IMG/VR virus record: IMGVR_UViG_3300046787_000200
Span: 124,001-188,000 of that record
Direction: 5' to 3' (one strand)
DNA length: 64,000 bases
Positions 1-9,859 of this stretch are shown here, in pieces; position 1 is the stretch's first letter, and each line of letters begins with the position of its first letter. Below the pieces are notes generated by a model. It was not told the DNA's origin. It was given only the letters and a program-made list of their open reading frames with translations, and searched no databases. Made by a program: the position numbers and the translations under genes.

Positions 1-4
1 GGTC

Positions 5-193
5 GTGAAACTTACCCCCAAACACGGCTACGGGCCAAACTGCTATACTGTGGCTACAACTTCAGAATGGTATGACATTGTTATTTGGATGTTGGAAAAT
101 GAAGTGGATCACTGGCATGTGTCTACTGGTCCCGAAGGCTATGGATTTCAAGTAAAATCAAAGGTTGAATGGTTTTTGTTGAGGTGGAGTTAA
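5..193 (+). CDS. LRW-family small protein 1 (unknown function)
   Basis: GTG start; ends VEWFLLRWS; W-M-x-E helix; preceding bases (t)gg-tcg-tga look like the W-S-stop end of an upstream member. Confidence 0.8.
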   Translation: MKLTPKHGYGPNCYTVATTSEWYDIVIWMLENEVDHWHVSTGPEGYGFQVKSKVEWFLLRWS

Positions 194-429
194 TGGATTT
201 AGATACGGTAAAACGAATAGCATATAAGTGGTCCACTGAAAATAGTAATCTCAAACCAATGATTGGTGACGCAAGAGTTATTACCGGTGATTATATAGTT
301 GACTCAAGGATATATCATTTTGAAAAAGCTAGTGGTATAGAATTAGATGTTTCCGGACTTAATCTCATAACAGGATATAAAATAGTTGATGAAGAAAAGT
401 TTGCTTGGTGTGTATTGAGGTATAGTTGA
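193..429 (+). CDS. LRW-family small protein 2 (TGYK-x-x-DE subfamily)
   Basis: Start moved to ATG193 (TAATG overlap, GAGGTGG upstream); ends FAWCVLRYS. Confidence 0.8.
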   Translation: MDLDTVKRIAYKWSTENSNLKPMIGDARVITGDYIVDSRIYHFEKASGIELDVSGLNLITGYKIVDEEKFAWCVLRYS

Positions 430-746
430 TGCGTAAATTCATACATCGTATCTGGTGGAAACTTATGCCTGGCACAATCATTAAAGTGAAATGGCCTAAA
501 GGTAAGATTACAGTAGATCATAATGATTCGAGATGGTGTGATCTTGGTGGTGCAGTATGGATAGAGTTTGAAAGCGCGGATCCAAACGATCACTATCGTC
601 CATGGATGGAAGCAAATGTAGGTCGTCAGAATTGGGATTGGAGTTGGGATATGCGAGACAATGATGTTGCTGAAAATGTATTGTCTATCAAGTTTCGTAA
701 AGGTAAAGAACAATATGCTTCAATGGTGGCACTAAAATGGATGTAA
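429..746 (+). CDS. LRW-family small protein 3
   Basis: ATG429 (TGATG overlap); PWMEANVG...W...FRKGKEQYASMVALKWM. Confidence 0.8.
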   Translation: MRKFIHRIWWKLMPGTIIKVKWPKGKITVDHNDSRWCDLGGAVWIEFESADPNDHYRPWMEANVGRQNWDWSWDMRDNDVAENVLSIKFRKGKEQYASMVALKWM

Positions 747-928
747 AAGTGTTTAGTTTACCCGGTGGAATAGACGGCTGGGATCAAGTTGTAGAACGGA
801 TTACTTGGTGTAGAGAACAGTTTGGTGAACGAACATTTGCAGGTCCTTGGGAATATAATGCAGTTAGTCATATGATTATTGTGCGTGAAGAAAAGAATAT
901 TATGTTGTATATGTTGAGGTGGTTATGA
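737..928 (+). CDS. LRW-family small protein 4
   Basis: WCREQFG...W...NIMLYMLRWL; GGTGG upstream of ATG737. Confidence 0.8.
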   Translation: MDVKVFSLPGGIDGWDQVVERITWCREQFGERTFAGPWEYNAVSHMIIVREEKNIMLYMLRWL

Positions 929-1137
929 AAGAGTTTCCATACACTGTAACTACTAAGAAACTCAAGCACGAGGCCGAACAATGGTGCACCAAGAATATTG
1001 GGGAACGATGGTTTGCTGTGGGGAGAAAGACAGGCAATTGGACATGCTTTTGGGCAGGAAGAGATGATCCTAAAAGTTATCGCTGGCACTTTAAAAATGA
1101 AAAAGATGCTGTTATGTTTTCGTTGAGGTGGTTATGA
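925..1137 (+). CDS. LRW-family small protein 5
   Basis: ATG925 (ATGA overlap); WCTKNIG...RW...DAVMFSLRWL. Confidence 0.85.
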   Translation: MKEFPYTVTTKKLKHEAEQWCTKNIGERWFAVGRKTGNWTCFWAGRDDPKSYRWHFKNEKDAVMFSLRWL

Positions 1138-1340
1138 TAAAGAAACAATATCATAGGCATCCAACGTCAGTAGGTTATTTCAGTAACTTTATCAGAATGA
1201 ATGACCCCGAAGGTGTCATTGAAGATGAACTGAAGAAATACAATGCCTCAGTTGGTAAAAGCAAGAATAAAAACTATAAACTGAATGTTAAGTGGCACGA
1301 TGAAAAATTATATATGTTGTTTGTATTGAGGTATCAATGA
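1134..1340 (+). CDS. LRW-family small protein 6
   Basis: ATG1134 (ATGA overlap); ends EKLYMLFVLRYQ. Confidence 0.8.
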   Translation: MIKKQYHRHPTSVGYFSNFIRMNDPEGVIEDELKKYNASVGKSKNKNYKLNVKWHDEKLYMLFVLRYQ

Positions 1341-1546
1341 GAGAACTAAAGAAAGAACTGTGGCCCCACAAGGTAGAGCTTGATTTGGATCAAAGTCAGC
1401 AAAAGATTGTGGAAATAGAAACTTGGCTGGGCGAACATTATGGTATTTATAAAGGTCGCTGGAATCAGGTCAACCATTATGACCATACTACATTTTATTT
1501 CCGTTCAGGCAGTGATGCTACTATGTTTAGTTTGAGGTGGCAATGA
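1337..1546 (+). CDS. LRW-family small protein 7
   Basis: ATGA overlap; IETWLGEHYG...RW...DATMFSLRWQ. Confidence 0.85.
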   Translation: MRELKKELWPHKVELDLDQSQQKIVEIETWLGEHYGIYKGRWNQVNHYDHTTFYFRSGSDATMFSLRWQ

Positions 1547-1794
1547 CTATTACTAGTTCAATGTTACAACATCTTAATGTTAAGGTACCAAAGTTATACA
1601 AAGTTGTATATGCTAAAACAATAGACGGCGTTCAAGCACAATGGCAAGTAAGTTATAAAGATTATATTGTAAATGAATGGCTTAAGGAAAACTGCGAATA
1701 TCCTTACTATCATAGTCCCGGATATCTTACAGAAAAGTTTATTGAGTTTACAGATGAAAAAGAAGCGTTGTGGTTTAGTTTGAGGTTTGAATGA
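1543..1794 (+). CDS. LRW-family small protein 8
   Basis: ATG1543 (ATGA overlap); EWLKEN...EKEALWFSLRFE. Confidence 0.85.
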   Translation: MTITSSMLQHLNVKVPKLYKVVYAKTIDGVQAQWQVSYKDYIVNEWLKENCEYPYYHSPGYLTEKFIEFTDEKEALWFSLRFE

Positions 1795-2045
1795 TAGTAA
1801 GTGAAGGTAAAATATTCGGTGAAAGATACTATACAGTTGATCCTGAGTTGGTTGACTTCAATGACTTTGATCCAAACTTTTTTCATCAATCCTGGCACGA
1901 TATAGAAATATGGTGTATCAAAACATTTGGATGCACCCCTGCAAATGGTGTTTGGGAACCTCACGGTAGATGGTATATGAACAATAGTAAGTTTTGGTTC
2001 AAAGATAAAAAAGATTTAGAATGGTTCTTACTAAAATGGGAATGA
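1791..2045 (+). CDS. LRW-family small protein 9
   Basis: ATGA overlap; WCIKTFG...RW...FWFKDKKDLEWFLLKWE. Confidence 0.85.
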   Translation: MIVSEGKIFGERYYTVDPELVDFNDFDPNFFHQSWHDIEIWCIKTFGCTPANGVWEPHGRWYMNNSKFWFKDKKDLEWFLLKWE

Positions 2046-2278
2046 AGATACATCACTATAAGCGTTTTGCCAATAACACATATTATTTTGTCGCGGCTTT
2101 TCCTGCACCAGATATAAATCTAACATATGAGATTAGAAAATGGTGTTATGAAGCGTACGGGTTACCGAATTATAAACCCGATACTGTTGAAACTCGTTGG
2201 GAAGATGATGTAAAATATGGTGAGATTACATTTGAAAGAGAAAGTGATTTAACTTTGTTTTTATTGAGGTGGGAATGA
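2042..2278 (+). CDS. LRW-family small protein 10
   Basis: ATG2042 (ATGA overlap); WCYEAYG...RW...ESDLTLFLLRWE. Confidence 0.85.
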   Translation: MKIHHYKRFANNTYYFVAAFPAPDINLTYEIRKWCYEAYGLPNYKPDTVETRWEDDVKYGEITFERESDLTLFLLRWE

Positions 2279-2478
2279 GTTTTATTGAAGAAGGAATGCG
2301 TGAATATTCATTCTATGGTGCAGGACAAGGTAGTGATAAGTTTTATGAAATGACTACTTGGTGTAGTGAAAACTTATATCACGGTGGTTATTATGAACCT
2401 AACTGGTGGTATGAATACCCATTCATATTCTTTAGTGATGAAAAAGAGTATATGTTATTTTTATTGAGGTGGCAATGA
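2275..2478 (+). CDS. LRW-family small protein 11
   Basis: ATG2275 (ATGA overlap); WCSEN...EKEYMLFLLRWQ. Confidence 0.85.
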   Translation: MSFIEEGMREYSFYGAGQGSDKFYEMTTWCSENLYHGGYYEPNWWYEYPFIFFSDEKEYMLFLLRWQ

Positions 2479-2738
2479 GAGACAATATCCACGAATTTAT
2501 TGACTCTTGGAAAGTATACGACAGACAGCACAAGTGTGATGTTGACTGGAACAGTCGTTTTAAATGTGGCGGCTATTATTCTGCTAAAGTCAGTAGATCC
2601 AGTATAACAGACGAATGGAATCAAATGCACAAATGGTGCGAGGAGTATATCGGCAAGCAAAGATATGCATGGACAGGTTCTACTTTTTGGTTTGAGACTA
2701 AAGAGGATACAGCATTTTTTATATTGAGATGGCTATGA
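2475..2738 (+). CDS. LRW-family small protein 12
   Basis: ATG2475 (ATGA overlap); WCEEYIG...FWFETKEDTAFFILRWL. Confidence 0.85.
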   Translation: MRDNIHEFIDSWKVYDRQHKCDVDWNSRFKCGGYYSAKVSRSSITDEWNQMHKWCEEYIGKQRYAWTGSTFWFETKEDTAFFILRWL

Positions 2739-2947
2739 GTAAAATAGATTATTGTAATATACCAGTAGTCTATACGAAAGTATCTACTGAACATCATTAT
2801 AATATGCGTCAATGGTTAGTTGATAACATAGACCCGGCTTGTTATGATGCTGAGGATTTCAGCCCAGTTAATGAAGATTACAGTAAAAGAACTATTTGGT
2901 TTGCTAATCATAAAGATGCAGTGTGGTTTAGATTAATATGGGAGTGA
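2735..2947 (+). CDS. LRW-family small protein 13
   Basis: ATG2735 (ATGA overlap); WLVDNI...DAVWFRLIWE. Confidence 0.8.
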   Translation: MSKIDYCNIPVVYTKVSTEHHYNMRQWLVDNIDPACYDAEDFSPVNEDYSKRTIWFANHKDAVWFRLIWE

Positions 2948-3168
2948 CCATAAAAGTATACCAGCCATATGCACCTGTGTTACAATGGCTACAAGACAAT
3001 GTAGGAACTATGCTACATTATAAGCCTATCATCTTTTGGCACGGCGAAGGTTGGCATTTAACAGTAGGACATGAAGTTGCAAACAGAGGACAAATGGGTA
3101 GACCTTATTGTACAGTAGAGTTTGATGATGAAGAAAAGGCAACTTGGTTTGGATTAGTATGGGGTTAA
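2944..3168 (+). CDS. LRW-family small protein 14
   Basis: GTG2944 (GTGA overlap) or ATG2938; WLQDNVG...EEKATWFGLVWG. Confidence 0.8.
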   Translation: MTIKVYQPYAPVLQWLQDNVGTMLHYKPIIFWHGEGWHLTVGHEVANRGQMGRPYCTVEFDDEEKATWFGLVWG

Positions 3169-3416
3169 AAGAAGATATATTAGATAAGATGAGTAAGCAG
3201 ATTTCTAATCATGTTGATTGGGAAATATTAGCCGATGTGAAAATAAGCGGCGGCTGGACCTGTGTTAAGTTAGATAGATATCTTAGTAATGAACACGCAG
3301 TTGATATTAAAATTTGGATCGAAGAAAACTGCACCGGTAAGTATGACTACTCGAATACAAAGTTTTTATTTGAAAAGAAGCAAGATGCTGAGTGGTTCAT
3401 ATTAAGATGGCAGTAA
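3159..3416 (+). CDS. LRW-family small protein 15
   Basis: ATG3159; WIEENC...FEKKQDAEWFILRWQ. Confidence 0.8.
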   Translation: MGLKEDILDKMSKQISNHVDWEILADVKISGGWTCVKLDRYLSNEHAVDIKIWIEENCTGKYDYSNTKFLFEKKQDAEWFILRWQ

Positions 3417-3646
3417 TGTATGAACATTATGATGAAGCTGGGTGGGAACATACACAACCGGGTTGGTATGAATGTAAAGTTAGAGCAGAACACATAGACA
3501 AATATGATGAAATGACCAAATGGTTAGAAAGTAATATTGGCAAATACAAAAGACATTGTAGATGGTGTGTAACTGATACTAATGTAGTTAGTTTTAAGTT
3601 TAGATATGAACGAGATTATATATTATTCACATTGAGGTGGAGTTAA
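3416..3646 (+). CDS. LRW-family small protein 16
   Basis: ATG3416 (TAATG overlap); WLESNIG...RW...ERDYILFTLRWS. Confidence 0.85.
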   Translation: MYEHYDEAGWEHTQPGWYECKVRAEHIDKYDEMTKWLESNIGKYKRHCRWCVTDTNVVSFKFRYERDYILFTLRWS

Positions 3647-3934
3647 ATGGAATTCTTTTTTACTGAAGCTGGCAACAATAGACCGTTCTTTATTTACAGA
3701 CTTAAAGTAGATGAAATAACCACTGAGATGCACGAGTGGTGTCTTGACTATCCTAGTAAAGGACCGTTCAGTCGTTGGCATATTGACCGTAAGATGATAA
3801 CAGATTCTAAAACAAACACAGTAACAAAGTTTGATATAGTTATTCAGTTTGAACTTAAGGATGCTTATCTTGCGTTTATGTATGCATTTGCAGGTCATAT
3901 TTTAAAAGACTTAACCTGGAAAGAATATAGATGA
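3647..3934 (+). CDS. Degenerate LRW-family protein with C-terminal extension
   Basis: EMHEWC...SRW...FELKDAYLAFMYAF, then about 14 extra residues; GAGGTGG upstream. Confidence 0.7.
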   Translation: MEFFFTEAGNNRPFFIYRLKVDEITTEMHEWCLDYPSKGPFSRWHIDRKMITDSKTNTVTKFDIVIQFELKDAYLAFMYAFAGHILKDLTWKEYR

Positions 3935-4215
3935 AAATACTACTGAATAGAAGTATTGGTGATAACATTAGACTAAACAGATATAAAAGAAATATGGAAT
4001 ACTCTATTATTAAAGACGGTTGTGATACTTATCCGTGGATGGAAACATTTGTTATCTGGCCACGCAGAAGTGTAAGTGGAGCACCATTATTCTTTACTAA
4101 AGCATATAAGCGTCAAGTATGGGTAGTATGGGGTAGCGGTTTTCACATGGAACCGATAGTTCAATACGCTACAGCATTTGATTTATTAACATATGACGAC
4201 AATAAAACCGTTTAA
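3931..4215 (+). CDS. Hypothetical protein
   Basis: ATGA overlap; no family motif seen. Confidence 0.6.
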   Translation: MKILLNRSIGDNIRLNRYKRNMEYSIIKDGCDTYPWMETFVIWPRRSVSGAPLFFTKAYKRQVWVVWGSGFHMEPIVQYATAFDLLTYDDNKTV

Positions 4216-4471
4216 AGATTATGATGACGATGATCCTAATATAGAACAGCGGAAAAAACGCTGGGACTATTGGGCGGCATTAAAACAGATTCGTAAAGAA
4301 TATATGACTGATATGAAGTCACTTGATGGACAGTTTGATGCATTTGACTTTGAAGATTACATTGAAGAAAACTATGGAATTAAGATGAACATAGTAGATG
4401 GAAACATTACTGATGGATACAAAGTAATGGATGAAAAGAAGTATCTAATATTTTTATTAAAATTCCAATGA
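4193..4471 (+). CDS. LRW-family small protein 17 (same subfamily as 193-429)
   Basis: DGYKVMDEKKYLIFLLKFQ aligns with TGYKIVDEEKFAWCVLRYS. Confidence 0.8.
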   Translation: MTTIKPFKDYDDDDPNIEQRKKRWDYWAALKQIRKEYMTDMKSLDGQFDAFDFEDYIEENYGIKMNIVDGNITDGYKVMDEKKYLIFLLKFQ

Positions 4472-4818
4472 ACAACTCACCTTTTGAAATATACAAAACA
4501 GAAAGAAATCGCTGGGTAACACACTGGCCTACATTTAAAAACATCAGAGATACAGAGACCGGTATAAAACTATTAGATATACTATTTGGTCAAATAAAAT
4601 GTGAGGAAGTGGGATTAGCACTACTTGTGCGTAATGGTGAAATAGATACACTGTGGATTAGTTATAGTGCTTGGGCAACTGATGTTAATAACTATTTCTC
4701 CGAATACTTACAAGATATGTATGAGATTCGTGGTGTAGTATTTCATAAACAACACGAAGCAGAACAACTACAAGATATATTAGAGAAGAAATATATTTGG
4801 AAAGTATTACAAGCATGA
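4468..4818 (+). CDS. Hypothetical protein, possibly a degenerate LRW member
   Basis: ATGA overlap; ends EKKYIWKVLQA. Confidence 0.65.
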   Translation: MNNSPFEIYKTERNRWVTHWPTFKNIRDTETGIKLLDILFGQIKCEEVGLALLVRNGEIDTLWISYSAWATDVNNYFSEYLQDMYEIRGVVFHKQHEAEQLQDILEKKYIWKVLQA

Positions 4819-5075
4819 CATTCTTCCCTAAGCCGGAGATTATAGAAATCGAACCAATCTACATTCGTAAATTCAAAAAGACCGTTTCAGTTGACAATAT
4901 ATGGATAGATAGTGTATTCTATGAGATTACAAAGTTTCCTATGGGTAGACAAAATACTATAGATTGGTTAACTGAACGTTATGGATATATGAAGTATTCC
5001 AATACATGGTGGTATACACATAATGGAATCTGTATGAACGATAAAATTTACACACATTATAAATTAATGGAATAA
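4815..5075 (+). CDS. Degenerate LRW-family protein
   Basis: ATG4815 (ATGA overlap); IDWLTERYG...WW...DKIYTHYKLME. Confidence 0.7.
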   Translation: MTFFPKPEIIEIEPIYIRKFKKTVSVDNIWIDSVFYEITKFPMGRQNTIDWLTERYGYMKYSNTWWYTHNGICMNDKIYTHYKLME

Positions 5076-5077
5076 TT

Positions 5078-5641
5078 ATGGCAAATGACATTATGATAGA
5101 CATTGAGAGTTTAGATACAACACCTAACTGTGTTATCTTAACTATTGGCGCGGTGCGCTTTGACCCTAAAGGTAGCGGAGTTGTTGAACGATTAGAACTA
5201 CGACCTACAGTAGAAGATCAAACAGAGATTTACGGGAGAAGTATCAATGAAGATACATTGCGTTGGTGGAGTGAACAGAGCCCTGAAGCACTTGAAGAAG
5301 CAATGGGAGACAATGGACGAGTCCCGTTTAAAGAGTGTATGGAGACCCTTTATAAGTTTTGTTGGAACCGTCGTGCTGTTTGGAGTAATGGTGCACCTTT
5401 TGACTTAGTTGTGATGGAGAATGCGTGGCGACAAGTTAGCGATAAGCCTAATCCTATTCCCTGGCCTTTCTGGTCTATGCGTGATACACGAACATTGTGG
5501 GAAATAACAGGTGTCAGTCTTAAAGACGGTGGACATACTACAAGTCACAAAGCAGTTGAAGATGCCGAAAGACAAGCTATTGTTGTACAAAAAGCGTATA
5601 CTAAACTTATCAAAGCAGAATTGGTAGCACCCCCAAAATGA
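5078..5641 (+). CDS. DEDD-family 3'-5' exonuclease (Rv2179c/RNase AS-like)
   Basis: MIDIESL (ExoI), WSNGAPFD (ExoII), RDTRT, H-KAVEDA (ExoIII). Confidence 0.85.
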   Translation: MANDIMIDIESLDTTPNCVILTIGAVRFDPKGSGVVERLELRPTVEDQTEIYGRSINEDTLRWWSEQSPEALEEAMGDNGRVPFKECMETLYKFCWNRRAVWSNGAPFDLVVMENAWRQVSDKPNPIPWPFWSMRDTRTLWEITGVSLKDGGHTTSHKAVEDAERQAIVVQKAYTKLIKAELVAPPK

Positions 5642-6219
5642 GAATTGATTCAGACGTAGATATTGACTTCGGTGATAGAGATAAGTTATTACAGCTTATC
5701 AAGCATACACCAGCGGCAATGCGTAATGCTAATCCTATACGTAAACATAATACAGGTGTTTACGTCACAGATATACCATATGATCCAGTAAATGATATGG
5801 CTGCAATTGATTATGTTGAAGCAGAGAAGCGTGGTTATTTTAAGTTAGATTTGTTGAATGTTCATGTTTATAGTCAAGTACGTGATGAGATGCATTTAGT
5901 TGAGTTGATGCGTGAACCTAACTGGGATAACTTAAAGAATAAAGACTTTGTAGAGAAACTGATCCACTTGGGAAATCATTATTATTCATTGGAAAAGATG
6001 CCTGAGCGTGTGAATAGTATTCCAAGATTAGCAATGTTTCTAGCTGTAATTAGACCTGCTAAAAAGCATTTGATAGGAAAGACTTGGAAGGAAGTAAGTG
6101 AAACTATTTGGGATAAAGGGTCAGATGGTTATAGCTTTAAAAAGAGTCACGCTATTGCGTATGCACAATTAGTCGTTGTACATATGAATCTACTTACACA
6201 ATCCTCTTTACTAAAGTAA
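5638..6219 (+). CDS. dnaE: Miniature DNA polymerase III alpha-like protein, catalytic (C-terminal) half
   Basis: SDVDIDF, HNTGVYV, FKLDLLN, LAVIRPA and GYSFKKSHAIAYA match the DnaE motifs PDFDVDF, HAGGVVI, KFDFLG, ALFRPG and GYGFNKSHSAAYA in order. Confidence 0.8.
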   Translation: MRIDSDVDIDFGDRDKLLQLIKHTPAAMRNANPIRKHNTGVYVTDIPYDPVNDMAAIDYVEAEKRGYFKLDLLNVHVYSQVRDEMHLVELMREPNWDNLKNKDFVEKLIHLGNHYYSLEKMPERVNSIPRLAMFLAVIRPAKKHLIGKTWKEVSETIWDKGSDGYSFKKSHAIAYAQLVVVHMNLLTQSSLLK

Positions 6220-6574
6220 TACTACGGCGTTTACTTCTACGTTTATTGAGTTCGCTTATACTACAAGTAGGACCGTGAATTATAGTAAGACTTTTGTTAT
6301 TGAAGGTTCTTAGATAGGGTTTGAAAATACTCCATTCTTCCTTCAAAAACAGATTTATGGGTATAAGTCGATTGCTTTCCCACCACCAAATATCACCTAA
6401 TTCTAAGAATTTTTCTTTTATTACAGTGTCTGCTATTGCACCGTAATCATATATTGTAGTAACAATATCATCCCTGTTTTGTACTATACCTACGTAGTCC
6501 TGGTTGGCATGCGAACATATTGTTATGAACGGGTGATTTAGAGTTAATTTGTTGAAAAATTCGTTTTGAATCAT
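6194..6574 (-). CDS. Hypothetical protein
   Basis: 126 aa ORF; TAAATA box 6 nt before ATG; convergent overlap with the dnaE half. Confidence 0.7.
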   Translation of the reverse strand: MIQNEFFNKLTLNHPFITICSHANQDYVGIVQNRDDIVTTIYDYGAIADTVIKEKFLELGDIWWWESNRLIPINLFLKEEWSIFKPYLRTFNNKSLTIIHGPTCSISELNKRRSKRRSITLVKRIV

Positions 6575-6642
6575 TGTTAATATTTACTATCCGAAATATT
6601 TATCATCGGGCGATATGGCAATATATTTTGATAAATATCAGT

Positions 6643-7410
6643 ATGTACTCAACTCAAGTTTTCGTCTATACACAAAGACAAATCGTTATACTTTTATCAG
6701 GATTTTCCCCAAGGAGCTATATGCCTCAGTATGCCAAACCACTTACACTTAATAAAGGTGTAGATAATCAGATTCAATTTCAGTTCCTAAACCAAGAACA
6801 AAAACCGGTTGATATTACCGGTAAATCAATTACCTGCAGAATTATTAACTATCAAGGTAACGTGGTCCTACTACAAAAAGCATTAACATTACAATTACCA
6901 GCTACAGGTATTGCCGCATTGATTTTGAATTCTGCTGATTTAGCTAGCATTGATGCACAGAAGTGTTATTATTCACTAGAGATACCAGTTGGCGAATTTG
7001 ACTATCCTGTGTTTGTGGATCAAAATGCAGGTGCTCGCGGTGATATGAATATTGTTAATAGTATATTACCAAGCTTTGTTCCTTCAATGCCAGTAAGTAT
7101 TCCGACTGGACAAGACTTCCCGAATCTTCATCCTAATAGCAATAGCGAAAGTAATATAACATATTATTCTAGTGTGATTGATACTAATGATAGTCCGATA
7201 TTAACATTACAAGCACAGTATACTGATTATTATGGTAATATTGTAGTAGAAGGTTCTACAATTGTAGATGGTGATTGGTATCCTATATTAACTGATACCT
7301 ATAGTAATGTTTCAGATACAAAAGGTTACGTAGTTCAGGGTTATCACCCATATGTCAGAATGCAATTCGAAAGCAACACTGGTGCGGTGACCAATATATT
7401 ATCAAGGTAA
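6643..7410 (+). CDS. Putative virion protein (beta-rich, BppU-N/Ig-like N-terminus)
   Basis: Start moved to ATG6643, 5 nt after ATAAATA; KGVDNQIQFQFLNQEQKPVDITG pattern. Confidence 0.6.
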   Translation: MYSTQVFVYTQRQIVILLSGFSPRSYMPQYAKPLTLNKGVDNQIQFQFLNQEQKPVDITGKSITCRIINYQGNVVLLQKALTLQLPATGIAALILNSADLASIDAQKCYYSLEIPVGEFDYPVFVDQNAGARGDMNIVNSILPSFVPSMPVSIPTGQDFPNLHPNSNSESNITYYSSVIDTNDSPILTLQAQYTDYYGNIVVEGSTIVDGDWYPILTDTYSNVSDTKGYVVQGYHPYVRMQFESNTGAVTNILSR

Positions 7411-7423
7411 TCAACCTAAACTA

Positions 7424-7452
7424 TTGTTTTCACAATACATATATGTTACAAT
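7424..7452 (+). promoter_or_regulatory. Sigma70-type promoter for primase (leaderless geometry)
   Basis: TTGTTT-17nt-TACAAT with TG before the -10; ATG 6 nt downstream. Confidence 0.6.
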
Positions 7453-7458
7453 ACATAG

Positions 7459-8439
7459 ATGTTTGATATCCTATCAATAATTCCCGGTAAAAAGAAATTA
7501 ACACACGGTGGATGGCATAGTTTTAATGCTATCTGCTGTAGCCATCGCGGGCATAAAACTGACAAACGTAGTCGAGGTGGTATTAAGTTTGACGGGCAAA
7601 ATAATTGGTCATATCATTGCTTTAATTGCGGTTTTAAATGTGGGTTTATGTTGGGTAAAAGTATTACTCAAAATACAAAAAGTTTATTGCAATGGTCGGG
7701 TATTGATCCTACACAAATAAGTAAATGGAGTTTAGAAAGTTTACAGCATAAAGATTTACTAGACTTTACTAATCTTAAAAAACAAAAATCAAAAATAAAA
7801 TTTAAAGAACATACATTGCCTGAAGGTGAGTTAATAGATGTAAATAATCCATTACACAAAGTATACACAGATTATCTGTCTGCTAGGTCGATAAATTATA
7901 ATGACTACCCGTTCTTAGTTACACCTAACGATACTGGCAGACAGTCAAATAGAATCATTATCCCCTACACTTATAACAATAAGATTGTTGGGCATACGAG
8001 CAGATTCTTAGATAATAAAATCCCTAAATATATTAACGAGCAACAACCAGGCTATGTATTTGGTTATGACTTTCAGAAACCCGATTGGGAAGTATGTTTG
8101 TTAGTTGAAGGTATCTTTGATGCATTAAGTTTAAATGCTTGTGCATTAACACATAATACAATCAACGATGATCAAGCACAAATACTAGCACAATTGAATA
8201 AACGTATTATCTTTATTCCAGATAGAGATAAGACAGGTTTAGAAACTTGTGATAGAGCATTAGAACTAGGTTATAGTGTAAGTATTCCTGATTGGGAAGA
8301 TGAAATCAAAGATGTAAATGACGCGGTAGTTAAGTATGGTAAGTTGCCTACATTGCTCAGTATATTGAGTAGTGCGACAACTAGTAAAATCAAAATAGAA
8401 CTACAGAGGAAGAAAATTGAAAAAAGATTACGAAAATAA
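7459..8439 (+). CDS. DNA primase (Zn-finger + TOPRIM)
   Basis: CCSH...YHCFNCG zinc ribbon; RIIIPY; LVEGIFDAL and DRD TOPRIM motifs. Confidence 0.88.
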   Translation: MFDILSIIPGKKKLTHGGWHSFNAICCSHRGHKTDKRSRGGIKFDGQNNWSYHCFNCGFKCGFMLGKSITQNTKSLLQWSGIDPTQISKWSLESLQHKDLLDFTNLKKQKSKIKFKEHTLPEGELIDVNNPLHKVYTDYLSARSINYNDYPFLVTPNDTGRQSNRIIIPYTYNNKIVGHTSRFLDNKIPKYINEQQPGYVFGYDFQKPDWEVCLLVEGIFDALSLNACALTHNTINDDQAQILAQLNKRIIFIPDRDKTGLETCDRALELGYSVSIPDWEDEIKDVNDAVVKYGKLPTLLSILSSATTSKIKIELQRKKIEKRLRK

Positions 8440-9859
8440 AAAAGATTATAGCGTTGATGTGCAAAAGATATTTTTGCGTATGATGATTACTGAAGCCGAA
8501 CTCTATACTAGGGTTATGAATATTCTCAATAGTGAGAATTTCGATAGAACACTAAGACCAGTTGCAGATTTATATAAAGAGCATACGAACAAATATAATG
8601 TATTGCCAGATCCAGTGCAAATCAAAGCAATTACTGGACAAGATATTGAACCAGTTCCTAACTTAAATCCTAGTCACTTTGATTGGTTCTTAGATGAGTT
8701 TGAATCATTTACTAAACGACAAGAATTAGAACGTGCTATCCTCAAAGCGGCTGATCTATTAGAGAAGGGCGATTTTAGTCCAGTTGAAAAACTAATCAAA
8801 GACGCAGTGCAAATTAGTTTGCAGAAAGACATGGGAACTGATTACTTTGCAGATCCTGCATCACGTATTAACAAATACTTTAATAGTGGTGGACAAGTTT
8901 CAACAGGCTGGCCGCAAATGGATCGTATCTTATATGGTGGTTTCAGTCGAGGTGAATTGAACATCTTTGCAGGTGGTTCTGGTTCAGGTAAGTCTCTTGT
9001 TATGATGAATATCGCATTGAACTGGTTGCAAGCAGGTATGAGTGGTGTTTATATCACACTTGAATTGAGCGAAGAACTAACTAGCTTGAGAACAGATGCT
9101 ATGTTGACTATGATGGGCACGAAAGCTATTCGTAAAGACATTGATAATACCAGTTTGAAAGTTAAGATGGTTGGTAAAAAGTCTGGTCAATATCGGGTTA
9201 AAGCATTACCTGCACAAAGTAATGTAAATGATATTCGTGCTTACTTAAAAGAAGTACAGATTCAAACAGGTATTAAGATTGACTTTGTGATGGTTGACTA
9301 CTTAGACTTGGTTATGCCTGTCTCTGTTAAAGTTAATCCTAACGATCAGTTCATCAAAGACAAGTATGTTGCAGAAGAATTGCGTAACTTAGCTAAAGAG
9401 ATGGGTATCTTGTTAGTCACAGCTTCACAGTTAAATCGTAGTGCTGTTGATGAAATTGAGTTTGACCATAGTCACATTGCTGGTGGTATCTCAAAGATTA
9501 ACACAGCAGATAACGTGTTCGGTATCTTTACAAGTCGTAGTATGCGTGAACGTGGTAAGTATCAGATTCAATGTATGAAGTCACGTAGTTCAACAGGTGT
9601 AGGTCAAAAAATTGACTTAGACTATGATATGGAAACTATGCGCATTAGTGATAGTGATCCTGACAATGAGAATAGCTATACTCCTAAACCTAGTGCTAAT
9701 CAAATTATGAGTCAATTAAAGCCACAATCTACATTAGCGTCAACAGAACCTATTATTGATCAAACTACAGGGGAGATATTAGAGCCTGAAAATAAGAAAA
9801 TCGTAGCAGATGTTCAGGGTTCTAAACTAAAGGCAATGCTAAAGGGTTTAAAGAAATAA
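8417..9859 (+). CDS. dnaB: Replicative DnaB/gp41-like helicase
   Basis: TTG start with GAGGA SD; Walker A GGSGSGKS, Walker B MVDYLDL, TASQLNR, KSR. Confidence 0.92.
   Translation: MKKDYENKKDYSVDVQKIFLRMMITEAELYTRVMNILNSENFDRTLRPVADLYKEHTNKYNVLPDPVQIKAITGQDIEPVPNLNPSHFDWFLDEFESFTKRQELERAILKAADLLEKGDFSPVEKLIKDAVQISLQKDMGTDYFADPASRINKYFNSGGQVSTGWPQMDRILYGGFSRGELNIFAGGSGSGKSLVMMNIALNWLQAGMSGVYITLELSEELTSLRTDAMLTMMGTKAIRKDIDNTSLKVKMVGKKSGQYRVKALPAQSNVNDIRAYLKEVQIQTGIKIDFVMVDYLDLVMPVSVKVNPNDQFIKDKYVAEELRNLAKEMGILLVTASQLNRSAVDEIEFDHSHIAGGISKINTADNVFGIFTSRSMRERGKYQIQCMKSRSSTGVGQKIDLDYDMETMRISDSDPDNENSYTPKPSANQIMSQLKPQSTLASTEPIIDQTTGEILEPENKKIVADVQGSKLKAMLKGLKK

What the first reader, a model, noticed from the sequence alone, without database searches (positions are those of the whole stretch)
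178..3649. The LRW motif is dual-coded: its codons form the Shine-Dalgarno of the next gene
Seen: 10 members encode L-R-x as TTG AGG T.. (seven as TTGAGGTGG), creating GAGGT 4-8 nt before the next start (e.g. 181-187 before ATG193, 916-922 before ATG925, 1534-1540 before ATG1543, 2266-2272 before ATG2275). AGG and TTG are visibly minority codons elsewhere in this AT-rich window. Junctions are near-identical in DNA: TTTTTATTGAGGTGG(G/C)AATGAG near 2258 and 2458, and GTTGAGGTGGTTATGA near 913 and 1122. Established: GAGGT pairs with the 16S anti-SD. Inference: each gene carries the RBS for whatever follows, making it a self-contained plug-in unit. The shared junction could also provide microhomology for array expansion and shuffling.
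Basis: partly seen in the sequence, partly recalled or inferred. Interest (0 to 1): 0.78.

Follow-up and report, generated by a model that had tools for sequence, protein, structure and literature searches.

The report
Protein tail codons double as ribosome-binding site
In a freshwater giant-phage genome, about 20 small related genes sit head to tail, and the codons for their conserved last residues (Leu-Arg-Trp) are chosen so that they also form the ribosome-binding site, or the start codon, of the next gene; the principle is known, but this is an unusually clean and widespread example.

Summary
Window 1-4500 is part of a tandem array of about 20 small paralogous genes in a 352-kb, 36.6% GC freshwater jumbo phage. 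All seven TTGAGGTGG copies in the 64-kb window lie at gene ends in this array.

- **Own genome:** AGG is 3.9% of Arg codons, but 12 of 14 at the motif.
- **Relatives:** in 64 related viral contigs (227 unique L-R-aromatic tails), AGG is 61% against a 7-9% background. CGT+CGC is 1% against about 40%.
- **Two junction types:** in one, TTG-AGG-TGG makes a strong Shine-Dalgarno (SD) site (median -7.2 kcal/mol) for a start overlapping the stop (ATGA or TAATG).
- **Gene gain and loss:** between relatives and in four independent metagenomes, breakpoints fall on the junction with 8-33 nt of microhomology. One natural variant lacks exactly gene 2275-2478. Family junctions are not hit more often than other gene ends.

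The protein family is large (3,268 clusters at 50% identity), exclusively viral and of unknown function. SD sites inside an upstream gene's 3' end, and shuffling through short conserved motifs (PeSLs), are both known. I rate this a new variant of a known kind.

The parts
1..4471 (+). The in-window part of a tandem array of about 20 small (60-105 aa) co-oriented paralogous genes with no intergenic space. It begins 848 nt upstream of the window.
   Evidence: ORF list and profile search. The only DNA-level repeat is the last ~50 nt of each gene (family D1). There is no excess of promoter-like or terminator-like sites.
5..193 (+). Family gene ending EWFLLRWS. Its GTG start overlaps the previous gene's stop (GTGA).
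179..187 (+). Type A junction: TTG AGG TGG is the SD for ATG 193 (TAATG overlap).
   Evidence: duplex energy -7.8 kcal/mol
415..423 (+). Type A junction: TTG AGG TAT is the SD for ATG 429.
   Evidence: -6.9 kcal/mol
732..740 (+). Type B junction: CTA AAA TGG contains ATG 737, the start of the next gene (10-nt overlap).
914..922 (+). Type A junction: TTG AGG TGG is the SD for ATG 925 (ATGA overlap).
   Evidence: -7.2 kcal/mol
1123..1131 (+). Type A junction: SD for ATG 1134 (ATGA).
1326..1334 (+). Type A junction: TTG AGG TAT is the SD for ATG 1337 (ATGA).
1532..1540 (+). Type A junction: SD for ATG 1543 (ATGA).
1780..1788 (+). Type A junction: TTG AGG TTT is the SD for ATG 1791 (ATGA).
   Evidence: -6.3 kcal/mol
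2031..2039 (+). Type B junction: CTA AAA TGG contains ATG 2036. An in-frame ATG at 2042 is also possible.
   Evidence: It is one end of the natural 693-nt deletion 2035->2729, seen in three runs.
2258..2272 (+). Type A junction with a 15-nt string (TTTTTATTGAGGTGG) repeated at 2458-2472; SD for ATG 2275.
   Evidence: It is the left crossover site of the natural one-gene deletion.
2275..2478 (+). Family gene (67 aa) that is exactly absent from a natural variant.
   Evidence: joint 2257->2458 skips 200 nt, with 15 nt fitting either side, in a 1547-nt contig
2458..2472 (+). Type A junction: second copy of the 15-nt string; SD for ATG 2475.
2724..2732 (+). Type B junction: TTG AGA TGG contains ATG 2729. 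An in-frame ATG at 2735 is also possible.
2933..2941 (+). Type B junction: TTA ATA TGG contains ATG 2938.
3154..3162 (+). Type B junction: TTA GTA TGG contains ATG 3159. The next protein's conserved MGLKED N-terminus starts here.
3402..3410 (+). Type B junction: TTA AGA TGG contains ATG 3407. ATG 3416 is also possible.
3632..3640 (+). Type A junction: TTG AGG TGG is the SD for ATG 3647.
   Evidence: -7.8 kcal/mol
5078..9859 (+). Conserved downstream flank of the array: Rv2179c-like 3'-5' exonuclease, an unnamed gene, a Toprim primase-like gene and a DnaB-like helicase.
   Evidence: The same flanking gene clusters bound the array in the related loci.

Best explanation
The region is a hypervariable array of small paralogous genes in an uncultured freshwater jumbo phage. 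It is probably read as one polycistronic mRNA with translational coupling.

Each protein ends with a conserved F-x-L-[R/K]-W, then one residue, then the stop. Protein-level selection keeps these residues. Synonymous codon choice is set by the initiation signals of the next cistron.
- **State A:** TTG-AGG-TGG spells GAGGTG, which pairs with the CACCUC near the 16S rRNA 3' end. It sits 3-6 nt before a start that overlaps the stop (NNATGA, or TRATG).
- **State B:** the basic-residue codon ends in A, so NNA-TGG contains the ATG of the next gene 10 nt before the end of the stop. No SD is present. Initiation there presumably relies on ribosomes terminating nearby.

Because every unit ends in the same short string, crossovers inside it remove or add whole genes and automatically restore a working junction.

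**Shown here:** the codon bias, its link to start position, the duplex energies, and the breakpoint positions with their microhomology.
**Inferred:** that the SD is used, that translation is coupled, and that the motif causes the recombination rather than merely marking it.
For: **Own genome.** AGG is 3.9% of Arg codons in long ORFs but 12 of 14 at the motif. Canonical SD words (AGGA, GGAG, GAGG) are enriched 5-9 nt before starts, so the host uses a standard anti-SD.

**Relatives.** 64 viral contigs hold 315 unique family members, all co-oriented.
- At 227 L-R-aromatic tails AGG is 139 (61%), against 8.7% in long ORFs and 7.1% in the bodies of the same genes.
- TTG is 136, against 22-24% background.
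- CGT+CGC is 3, against about 40% background.

**Link to the next start.** With an ATG at -4 or -1 and no in-motif ATG, the codon is AGG in 64 of 83, 24 of 28 and 28 of 28 junctions. With GTG/TTG at -4 it is AGG in 10 of 10. Otherwise the codon ends in A and makes the ATG.

**Depth of the pattern.** The AGG type is the majority state in about 16 separate orthologous clusters that are less than 45% identical to each other. The two states switch within at least 10 clusters.

**SD strength.** The median duplex energy is -7.2 kcal/mol for type A (96% at or below -6). It is -2.2 for type B and -1.5 for random positions.

**More distant homologues.** Contigs of 31-48% GC show the same junctions. Where the tail is one residue longer (LRWSS), the SD shifts to TGG-AGT, giving GGAG.

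**Last residue.** Ser is TCA in 27 of 27 ATGA junctions and AGT in 24 of 26 TTGATG junctions.

**Breakpoints.**
- Of 13 indel events at family junctions, 10 have 8-33 nt of microhomology, and 8 of these contain the GAGG core (7 the full TTGAGGTGG).
- 31 non-family events have 8 nt or less (Mann-Whitney p = 1e-5).
- Contigs from four independent freshwater or estuary runs show whole-gene deletions joined in the motif: 2257->2458, 2035->2729 (in three runs), 421->1337 and 924->1337.
Against: - There is no expression, ribosome-profiling or reporter data. The host is unknown, so its anti-SD sequence is assumed.
- Paralogues and orthologues are not independent samples, so nominal p-values overstate the case. 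The per-cluster count is the safer statistic.
- AGG and the ATGA overlap could be co-inherited as one recombining block.
- Type B junctions manage without any SD, so the SD is not indispensable for the family.
- Family junctions are not over-represented among indel events: 13 of 44, against 31% of gene ends.
- Non-family events also lie within about 25 nt of stops: 27 of 31, against a 7.6% random expectation. Location at gene boundaries therefore needs no special motif.
Confidence: 0.8

Rival explanations
1. The shared TTGAGGTGG is only a relic of common descent or gene conversion among paralogues. It has no role in translation.
For: Paralogues share a ~50-nt 3' segment at 60-70% DNA identity, and one pair reaches 85% over 46 nt across the junction. 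Recombination does occur in the motif, which could homogenise it.
Against: Elsewhere in the same genes, synonymous sites follow background codon usage: AGG is 7.1% in gene bodies, and the proteins are only 18-38% identical. The codon state tracks the position of the next start. CGT and CGC are almost absent in both states. The state has switched repeatedly within orthologous clusters while staying in one of the two workable forms.
Confidence: 0.07
2. The motif is a DNA-level site, such as a Chi-like recombination hotspot, a nuclease or recombinase target, or an attC-like site. Its match to an SD is incidental.
For: Indel breakpoints fall in the motif with microhomology. GGTGG also occurs in E. 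coli Chi (own knowledge).
Against: The 9-mer occurs only at family gene ends. All 7 window copies are in the array, so it is not a genome-wide over-represented word. There are no local inverted repeats or stem-loops at the junctions. No recombinase was found in the Pfam-scanned flank. Family junctions show no excess of indel events. This reading also fails to explain the fixed spacing to the start, or the A-ending alternative that makes an ATG.
Confidence: 0.05
3. The SD-like sequence just before the stop acts on the elongating ribosome, by pausing it or stimulating frameshifting as in prfB. This would yield fused proteins or regulated termination instead of reinitiation.
For: The SD lies 1 nt before the last sense codon. 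Short SD-to-P-site spacing is known to promote +1 frameshifting (Devaraj and Fredrick 2010, cited in PMC8410138).
Against: The next gene lies in the -1 (+2) frame, not +1. The last sense codon varies (any NNA), so there is no slippery site. Each downstream ORF has its own ATG exactly at the overlap.
Confidence: 0.03
4. On the shuffling sub-claim only: breakpoints lie at junctions because only indels that keep genes intact survive. The microhomology is a passive by-product of every gene ending in the same conserved codons.
For: 27 of 31 non-family events also lie within -25 to +8 nt of a stop, with little or no microhomology. Family junctions are not hit more often than their share of gene ends.
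Against: Family events are precise and overlap by up to 33 nt, whereas many non-family events are imprecise replacements. The same joint, 2035->2729, recurs in three independent runs.
Confidence: 0.4

Closest known systems
[quoted passage not shown] 2019, PMC6728339; review PMC12548453)
   Same: Overlaps of 4 nt and 1 nt. A strong SD lies in the last codons of the upstream gene. The genes are co-oriented and tightly packed.
   Different: Here the SD is carried by a conserved protein motif shared by a whole paralogous family. A second state places the start codon itself inside the motif, with a 10-nt overlap and no SD. Coupling has not been tested here.
Codon-usage and stop-codon constraints at gene 3' ends caused by the downstream RBS and start (Eyre-Walker 1996, as cited in PMC8410138; Palleja et al. 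2009, PMC2784483)
   Same: Synonymous codon choice in the last codons is shifted towards SD-forming codons, and TGA is favoured as the stop. The same trend holds genome-wide here: in non-family genes AGG is 15% of Arg in the last 8 codons against 3.8% in gene bodies.
   Different: The effect is extreme here (61-86% AGG at one fixed residue) and is conserved across thousands of diverged homologues. Elsewhere it is only a weak statistical trend.
PeSL cassettes (early promoter plus stem-loop) that mediate modular shuffling in hyperplastic regions of T4-type phages (Arbiol et al. 2010, PMC2839356; Comeau et al. 2014, PMC4122927)
   Same: A short conserved expression signal is repeated between small non-essential ORFs in a hypervariable region of a large myovirus. 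Indel breakpoints between relatives coincide with it.
   Different: The repeat here is a translation signal embedded in coding sequence (9-33 nt), not an intergenic promoter-terminator module. There is no excess of promoter-like or terminator-like sites and no intergenic space. Mini-circles were not looked for.
Integron gene-cassette arrays (own knowledge)
   Same: Arrays of promoterless small ORFs whose number and order vary between relatives. Each unit ends in a conserved recombination-associated sequence.
   Different: There are no attC-like inverted repeats, and no integrase in the flank that was scanned. The units are paralogues of one family, and the events look like homology- or microhomology-based crossovers.

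Membership tests
Translationally coupled overlapping gene pairs with an intragenic SD | The stop of the upstream gene overlaps the start of the downstream gene by 4 nt (ATGA) or 1 nt (TRATG). | tested here: met
   12 window-region junctions and most AGG-type junctions in the 64 loci.
Translationally coupled overlapping gene pairs with an intragenic SD | An SD complementary to the 16S 3' end lies in the last codons of the upstream gene at a workable spacing. | tested here: met
   GAGGTG with a median duplex energy of -7.2 kcal/mol, and 3-6 nt between its end and the start. The host 16S sequence is assumed to be canonical, based.
Translationally coupled overlapping gene pairs with an intragenic SD | Downstream translation depends on translation of the upstream cistron. 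| not testable with these tools
   This needs reporter constructs or ribosome profiling. The host is uncultured.
PeSL-type mobile regulatory cassettes | A sigma-70-like early promoter plus a stem-loop terminator between ORFs. | tested here: not met
   30 promoter-like sites against 27.8 expected, and 4 terminator-like sites against 2.5; no local inverted repeats at the junctions. The genes overlap, so there is no spacer.
PeSL-type mobile regulatory cassettes | Located in a hyperplastic region of small variable ORFs between conserved core blocks. | tested here: met
   the array lies between conserved flanking gene clusters. Its size ranges from 1-2 to more than 20 members, and gene order is shuffled.
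PeSL-type mobile regulatory cassettes | Indel breakpoints between relatives coincide with the repeated motif. | tested here: met
PeSL-type mobile regulatory cassettes | Excised circular DNAs formed by recombination between neighbouring motifs. | not tested
One 'goes back' joint (1766->1337) is compatible with this but not informative.
Integron cassette array | attC sites (imperfect inverted repeats) at cassette ends and an adjacent integrase. | tested here: not met
   One search found no junction inverted repeats. One search found no integrase in the downstream flank. The upstream flank was not scanned with Pfam.
Named protein family for the array proteins | A significant match to a curated profile or a solved fold. 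| tested here: not met
   No significant hits in Pfam, PHROGs, NCBIfam or PADLOC, in PDB sequences, or in PDB folds, where the best E-value was 2.0. AlphaFold DB hits were unnamed small proteins only.

The most novel reading that the evidence does not exclude
The conserved C-terminal codons are a coding-embedded cassette boundary. One 9-15 nt string would serve at once as protein tail, as ribosome-binding site (or start codon) for whatever gene comes next, and as the crossover point for short-homology recombination. Any family member could then be inserted, lost or reordered and still leave a working junction. This would be the translational counterpart of PeSLs or attC sites, and it would help explain how the family diversified into thousands of lineages in uncultured phages.
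Probability: 0.3. Interest if true: 0.7.

Novelty: new variant of a known kind. Interest (0 to 1): 0.5.

Why it matters
It is a clear natural example of one short sequence under three overlapping constraints: protein tail, initiation signal, and recombination junction. It also has a built-in natural control, because there are two alternative junction states.

- **Practical use.** The next gene's start can be called from the codon state alone (AGG gives -4 or -1; an A-ending codon gives the in-motif ATG). This would improve annotation of small-ORF arrays in phage metagenomes.
- **A model system.** It could serve to study termination-reinitiation with and without an SD.
- **Gene flux.** It gives a concrete mechanism to test for gene gain and loss in phage hypervariable regions that lack PeSL-type promoters.
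- **A family to characterise.** It flags a very large uncharacterised family of small viral proteins (3,268 clusters at 50% identity).

Tried and rejected
**Searches that found nothing**
- Megablast of window 1-6000 against GenBank phages gave no match.
- tblastn of a widespread family member against the same collection gave no match, so no cultured phage there carries the family.
- A scan of prokaryote genomes found no relative, so there is no prophage or host clue.
- Pfam, PHROGs, NCBIfam and PADLOC gave no significant family.
- PDB by sequence gave nothing.

**Structure and function**
- The AlphaFold model is a beta-alpha-beta-beta-alpha fold with mean pLDDT 82.
- It has no significant PDB match and only unnamed AlphaFold DB neighbours.
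- The protein atlas returned viral hypothetical proteins.
- The proteins' function stays unknown.

- The search for related loci with the whole-family alignment failed because it was too diverse. A subfamily alignment worked.
- Two literature calls failed on term syntax.

**Spurious hits in the representative search**
- An 890-aa hit with 13 stretches (P0121) is a low-complexity repeat.
- A 1146-aa helicase (P0209) matches only the N-terminal helix part of the profile.

**Ideas considered and rejected**
- Chi-like or nuclease site.
- prfB-like frameshift.
- attC-like site.
The reasons are given under the rival explanations.

**Not done**
- mRNA-structure masking of the junction SDs.
- RNA-level evidence. 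Reads were laid on DNA contigs, and the one metatranscriptome listed held almost none of the sequence.

Full report
**What is there.** The window is bases 124,001-188,000 of a single 352,012-bp contig with 36.6% GC. The contig carries a 1,187-aa tail sheath, 44-47% identical to those of jumbo myoviruses such as PA5oct and Atu_ph07. Public runs that hold the sequence are freshwater, estuary and drinking-water metagenomes. It is therefore an uncultured freshwater jumbo phage.

From 848 nt before the window start to about window 4471, the + strand carries roughly 20 consecutive small genes of 60-105 aa with no intergenic space. Fourteen of them align as one family with the consensus W-x-x-E-N-x-G ... 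W ... F-x-F-x-x-E-K-D-A-x-x-F-x-L-R-W-x-stop. A profile search finds about 20 members in the genome. A few are isolated copies at genome positions 91.7, 259.3 and 263.8 kb. The array shows no excess of promoter-like or terminator-like sites. The only DNA repeat is the last ~50 nt of each gene. Immediately downstream lie an Rv2179c-like exonuclease, a Toprim primase-like gene and a DnaB-like helicase.

**Checking the observation.** TTGAGGT occurs 10 times on the + strand between 179 and 3638. TTGAGGTGG occurs 7 times, all in the array, against 0.32 expected by chance. Each copy encodes L-R-[W/Y/F] followed by one residue and the stop. The next start lies at -4 (ATGA), at -1 (TAATG) or directly after the stop. 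In 181 long ORFs of the genome AGG is 3.9% of Arg codons and TTG 22% of Leu codons. At the 14 L-R-aromatic tails in the genome, 12 use AGG and 13 use TTG.

**Is the host SD-dependent, and is this general in the genome?** AGGA, AAGGA, GGAG and GAGG are enriched 5-9 nt before the starts of long genes. In non-family genes AGG is 15% of Arg codons in the last eight codons, against 3.8% in gene bodies. Of 108 non-family junctions with an ATG at -4 or -1, 21% have a strong SD inside the upstream gene. Using the end of a gene as the RBS of the next one is therefore ordinary in this phage. That matches the literature (PMC6728339; PMC2784483; Eyre-Walker 1996 as cited in PMC8410138). The family is an extreme and regular case of it.

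**Diverse homologues.** A profile search of 5.8 billion proteins returned 181 metagenomic homologues, all ending F-x-L-[R/K]-W-x. An exhaustive search of 1.84 billion cluster representatives gave 3,268 hits at E <= 0.001, nearly all small proteins whose C-terminus coincides with the end of the profile.

Using one subfamily as an anchor, I fetched 64 viral contigs. They hold 315 unique family members, all co-oriented. The codon counts at the 227 L-R-aromatic tails are as follows.

| Codon(s) at the motif | Count of 227 | Background |
|---|---|---|
| AGG | 139 (61%) | 8.7% in long ORFs; 7.1% in bodies of the same genes |
| TTG | 136 | 22-24% |
| CGT + CGC | 3 | about 40% |

Seven further loci from more distant homologues (31-48% GC) show the same junctions. 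Where the tail is one residue longer (LRWSS), the SD moves to TGG-AGT, which gives GGAG.

**Two junction states.** Sorting junctions by where an ORF-opening ATG lies gives a sharp split.
- **Type A.** With a start at -4 or -1 and no earlier ATG, the Arg codon is AGG in 64 of 83, 24 of 28 and 28 of 28 junctions. It is AGG in 10 of 10 junctions with GTG or TTG at -4.
- **Type B.** In the remaining large class the codon before TGG ends in A (AGA, CGA, AAA; rarely ACA, ATA, GTA, TTA). NNA-TGG then contains an ATG 10 nt before the end of the stop. In 56 junctions this is the only candidate start. All three start positions lie in the same frame.

Further points:
- The predicted duplex with the anti-SD has a median of -7.2 kcal/mol for type A (96% at or below -6). 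It is -2.2 for type B and -1.5 for random positions.
- Among AGG-type motifs the Leu codon ends in G in about 90% of cases. Among A-ending motifs it does so in about 27%, which is background.
- The last residue follows the same logic. Ser is TCA in 27 of 27 ATGA junctions and AGT (making GGAG) in 24 of 26 TTGATG junctions.
- AGG is the majority state in about 16 separate orthologous clusters. The two states interchange within at least 10 clusters. The pattern is therefore maintained, not merely inherited.
- L, R/K and W persist under different codons, so the residues themselves are under protein-level selection. Only the codon choice is set by the junction.
- Six window junctions are type B: 737, 2036, 2729, 2938, 3159 and 3407.

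**Breakpoints.** In the 64 loci the array sits between the same conserved flanking genes. It varies from one or two members to more than 20, and gene order is shuffled. I examined collinear pairs of loci at 80% DNA identity or more and found 44 distinct indel events.

| Measure | Family junctions (13 events) | Other gene ends (31 events) |
|---|---|---|
| Microhomology | 10 events with 8-33 nt; 8 contain the GAGG core, 7 the full TTGAGGTGG | 8 nt or less, often imprecise |
| Within -25..+8 nt of a stop (random 7.6%) | 13 of 13 | 27 of 31 |

The difference in microhomology length is significant (Mann-Whitney p = 1e-5). At family junctions the microhomology typically ends at the last base of the TGG codon.

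Laying contigs from four independent runs on window 1-5000 gave natural variants joined in the motif:
- 2257->2458 removes exactly gene 2275-2478, with 15 nt fitting either side, in a 1,547-nt contig;
- 2035->2729 removes three genes and is seen in three runs;
- 421->1337 and 924->1337 remove four and two genes.

A 15-nt repeat is too short to mislead a k=31 assembler (own knowledge), so I take these joints as real.

Two caveats limit the conclusion. Family junctions make up 31% of gene ends and 30% of events, so they are not hit more often. Non-family events also sit at gene boundaries. Selection for intact genes therefore explains where the events lie. The motif explains only how precise they are.

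**The proteins.** No curated family matches them. The AlphaFold model is a beta-alpha-beta-beta-alpha fold with mean pLDDT 82. It has no significant PDB match and only unnamed neighbours in AlphaFold DB. No homologue was found in prokaryote genomes or in GenBank phages. Function is unknown. Their position next to replication genes, their variability and their small size suggest dispensable accessory proteins. That is inference only.

**Mechanism proposed.** The array is one polycistronic message.
- **At type A junctions**, the ribosome finishing gene n has its anti-SD paired with GAGGTG a few bases behind the stop. After termination the small subunit is held there and starts gene n+1 at the overlapping ATG. 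De novo initiation on the same strong SD is also possible.
- **At type B junctions**, there is no SD. The ATG 10 nt upstream of the stop is presumably reached by terminating ribosomes.
- **Recombination** within the shared 9-33 nt removes, adds or reorders whole units and restores a working junction every time.

The sequence statistics and the breakpoints are shown here. Use of the SD, coupling, and causation of the recombination are inferred.

**Comparison with known systems, and verdict.** The RBS-in-upstream-gene principle, the ATGA/TGATG overlaps and the codon bias at gene ends are all established. Shuffling of small ORFs through short repeated expression signals is established for PeSLs in T4-type phages (PMC2839356, PMC4122927).

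This case differs in three ways. The signal is translational and embedded in a conserved protein tail. It comes in two interchangeable forms. It is shared by a very large uncharacterised viral family. It fails the defining PeSL and integron features: no promoter or terminator, and no attC or integrase. It meets the sequence-level features of coupled overlapping pairs.

I rate it a new variant of a known kind, with interest about 0.5. It is solid and tidy, useful for annotation and as a model system, but not a new principle.

Noticed in passing
window 732-740, 2031-2039, 2724-2732, 2933-2941, 3154-3162, 3402-3410; also 98 junctions in L001-L064: A second junction state. The codon before the conserved Trp ends in A, so NNA-TGG contains the ATG of the next gene (10-nt overlap). 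There is no SD upstream (median duplex energy -2.2 kcal/mol).
   Followed up: yes
own genome (outside the window), + strand gene ends at 241,760, 243,030 and 243,903: A second small paralogous set ends in (H/V)FGVE(E/L)-stop. The Gly-Val codons GGA-GTx spell GGAG 7-8 nt before an ATGA overlap. This is another conserved protein tail doubling as an SD in the same genome.
   Followed up: partly
own genome 123,152-124,000 (just upstream of the window); 91,717-91,965; 259,308-259,538; 263,833-264,033: The array starts before the window. Isolated family copies lie elsewhere, and the one at 259.5 kb has the same TTGAGGTGG-CTATGA junction.
   Followed up: partly
window 1299-1344 and 2437-2482: A 46-nt stretch is 85% identical across two non-adjacent junctions. 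It runs into the first codons of the next genes (both start ATGAGAGA), which suggests a past exchange or conversion spanning the junction.
   Followed up: no
P0209 (1146 aa): A helicase-like protein has six tandem repeats that match only the N-terminal helix part of the family profile (…E-x-W-C-x-x-N-F…P-x-W-E-R-R-L-P…). It may be a distant relative of the domain, or a chance match.
   Followed up: no
L009 around 6490-6510: A tandem duplication of the 9-mer GGCTATAAT sits exactly at a family junction (…AGGTGG-CTATAATGG-CTATAATG…). This looks like slippage at the junction.
   Followed up: no
window 4193-4215: Genes 3931-4215 and 4193-4471 overlap by 23 nt. This is unlike the 1, 4 or 10-nt overlaps in the rest of the array, and the start of the second gene is uncertain.
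   Followed up: no
L066 1-2841 (- strand): In one distant contig the array abuts a large Eco57I/ResIII-type restriction-modification-like gene on the opposite strand.
   Followed up: no
window 1-5000: Besides the junction-to-junction deletions, some contigs show short internal 'skips' (1376->1495, 3190->3375, 4359->4430, 4601->4702) with unknown sequence between the ends. These are probably divergent replaced segments, not deletions. One 'goes back' joint (1766->1337) hints at a reordered or duplicated variant.
   Followed up: no
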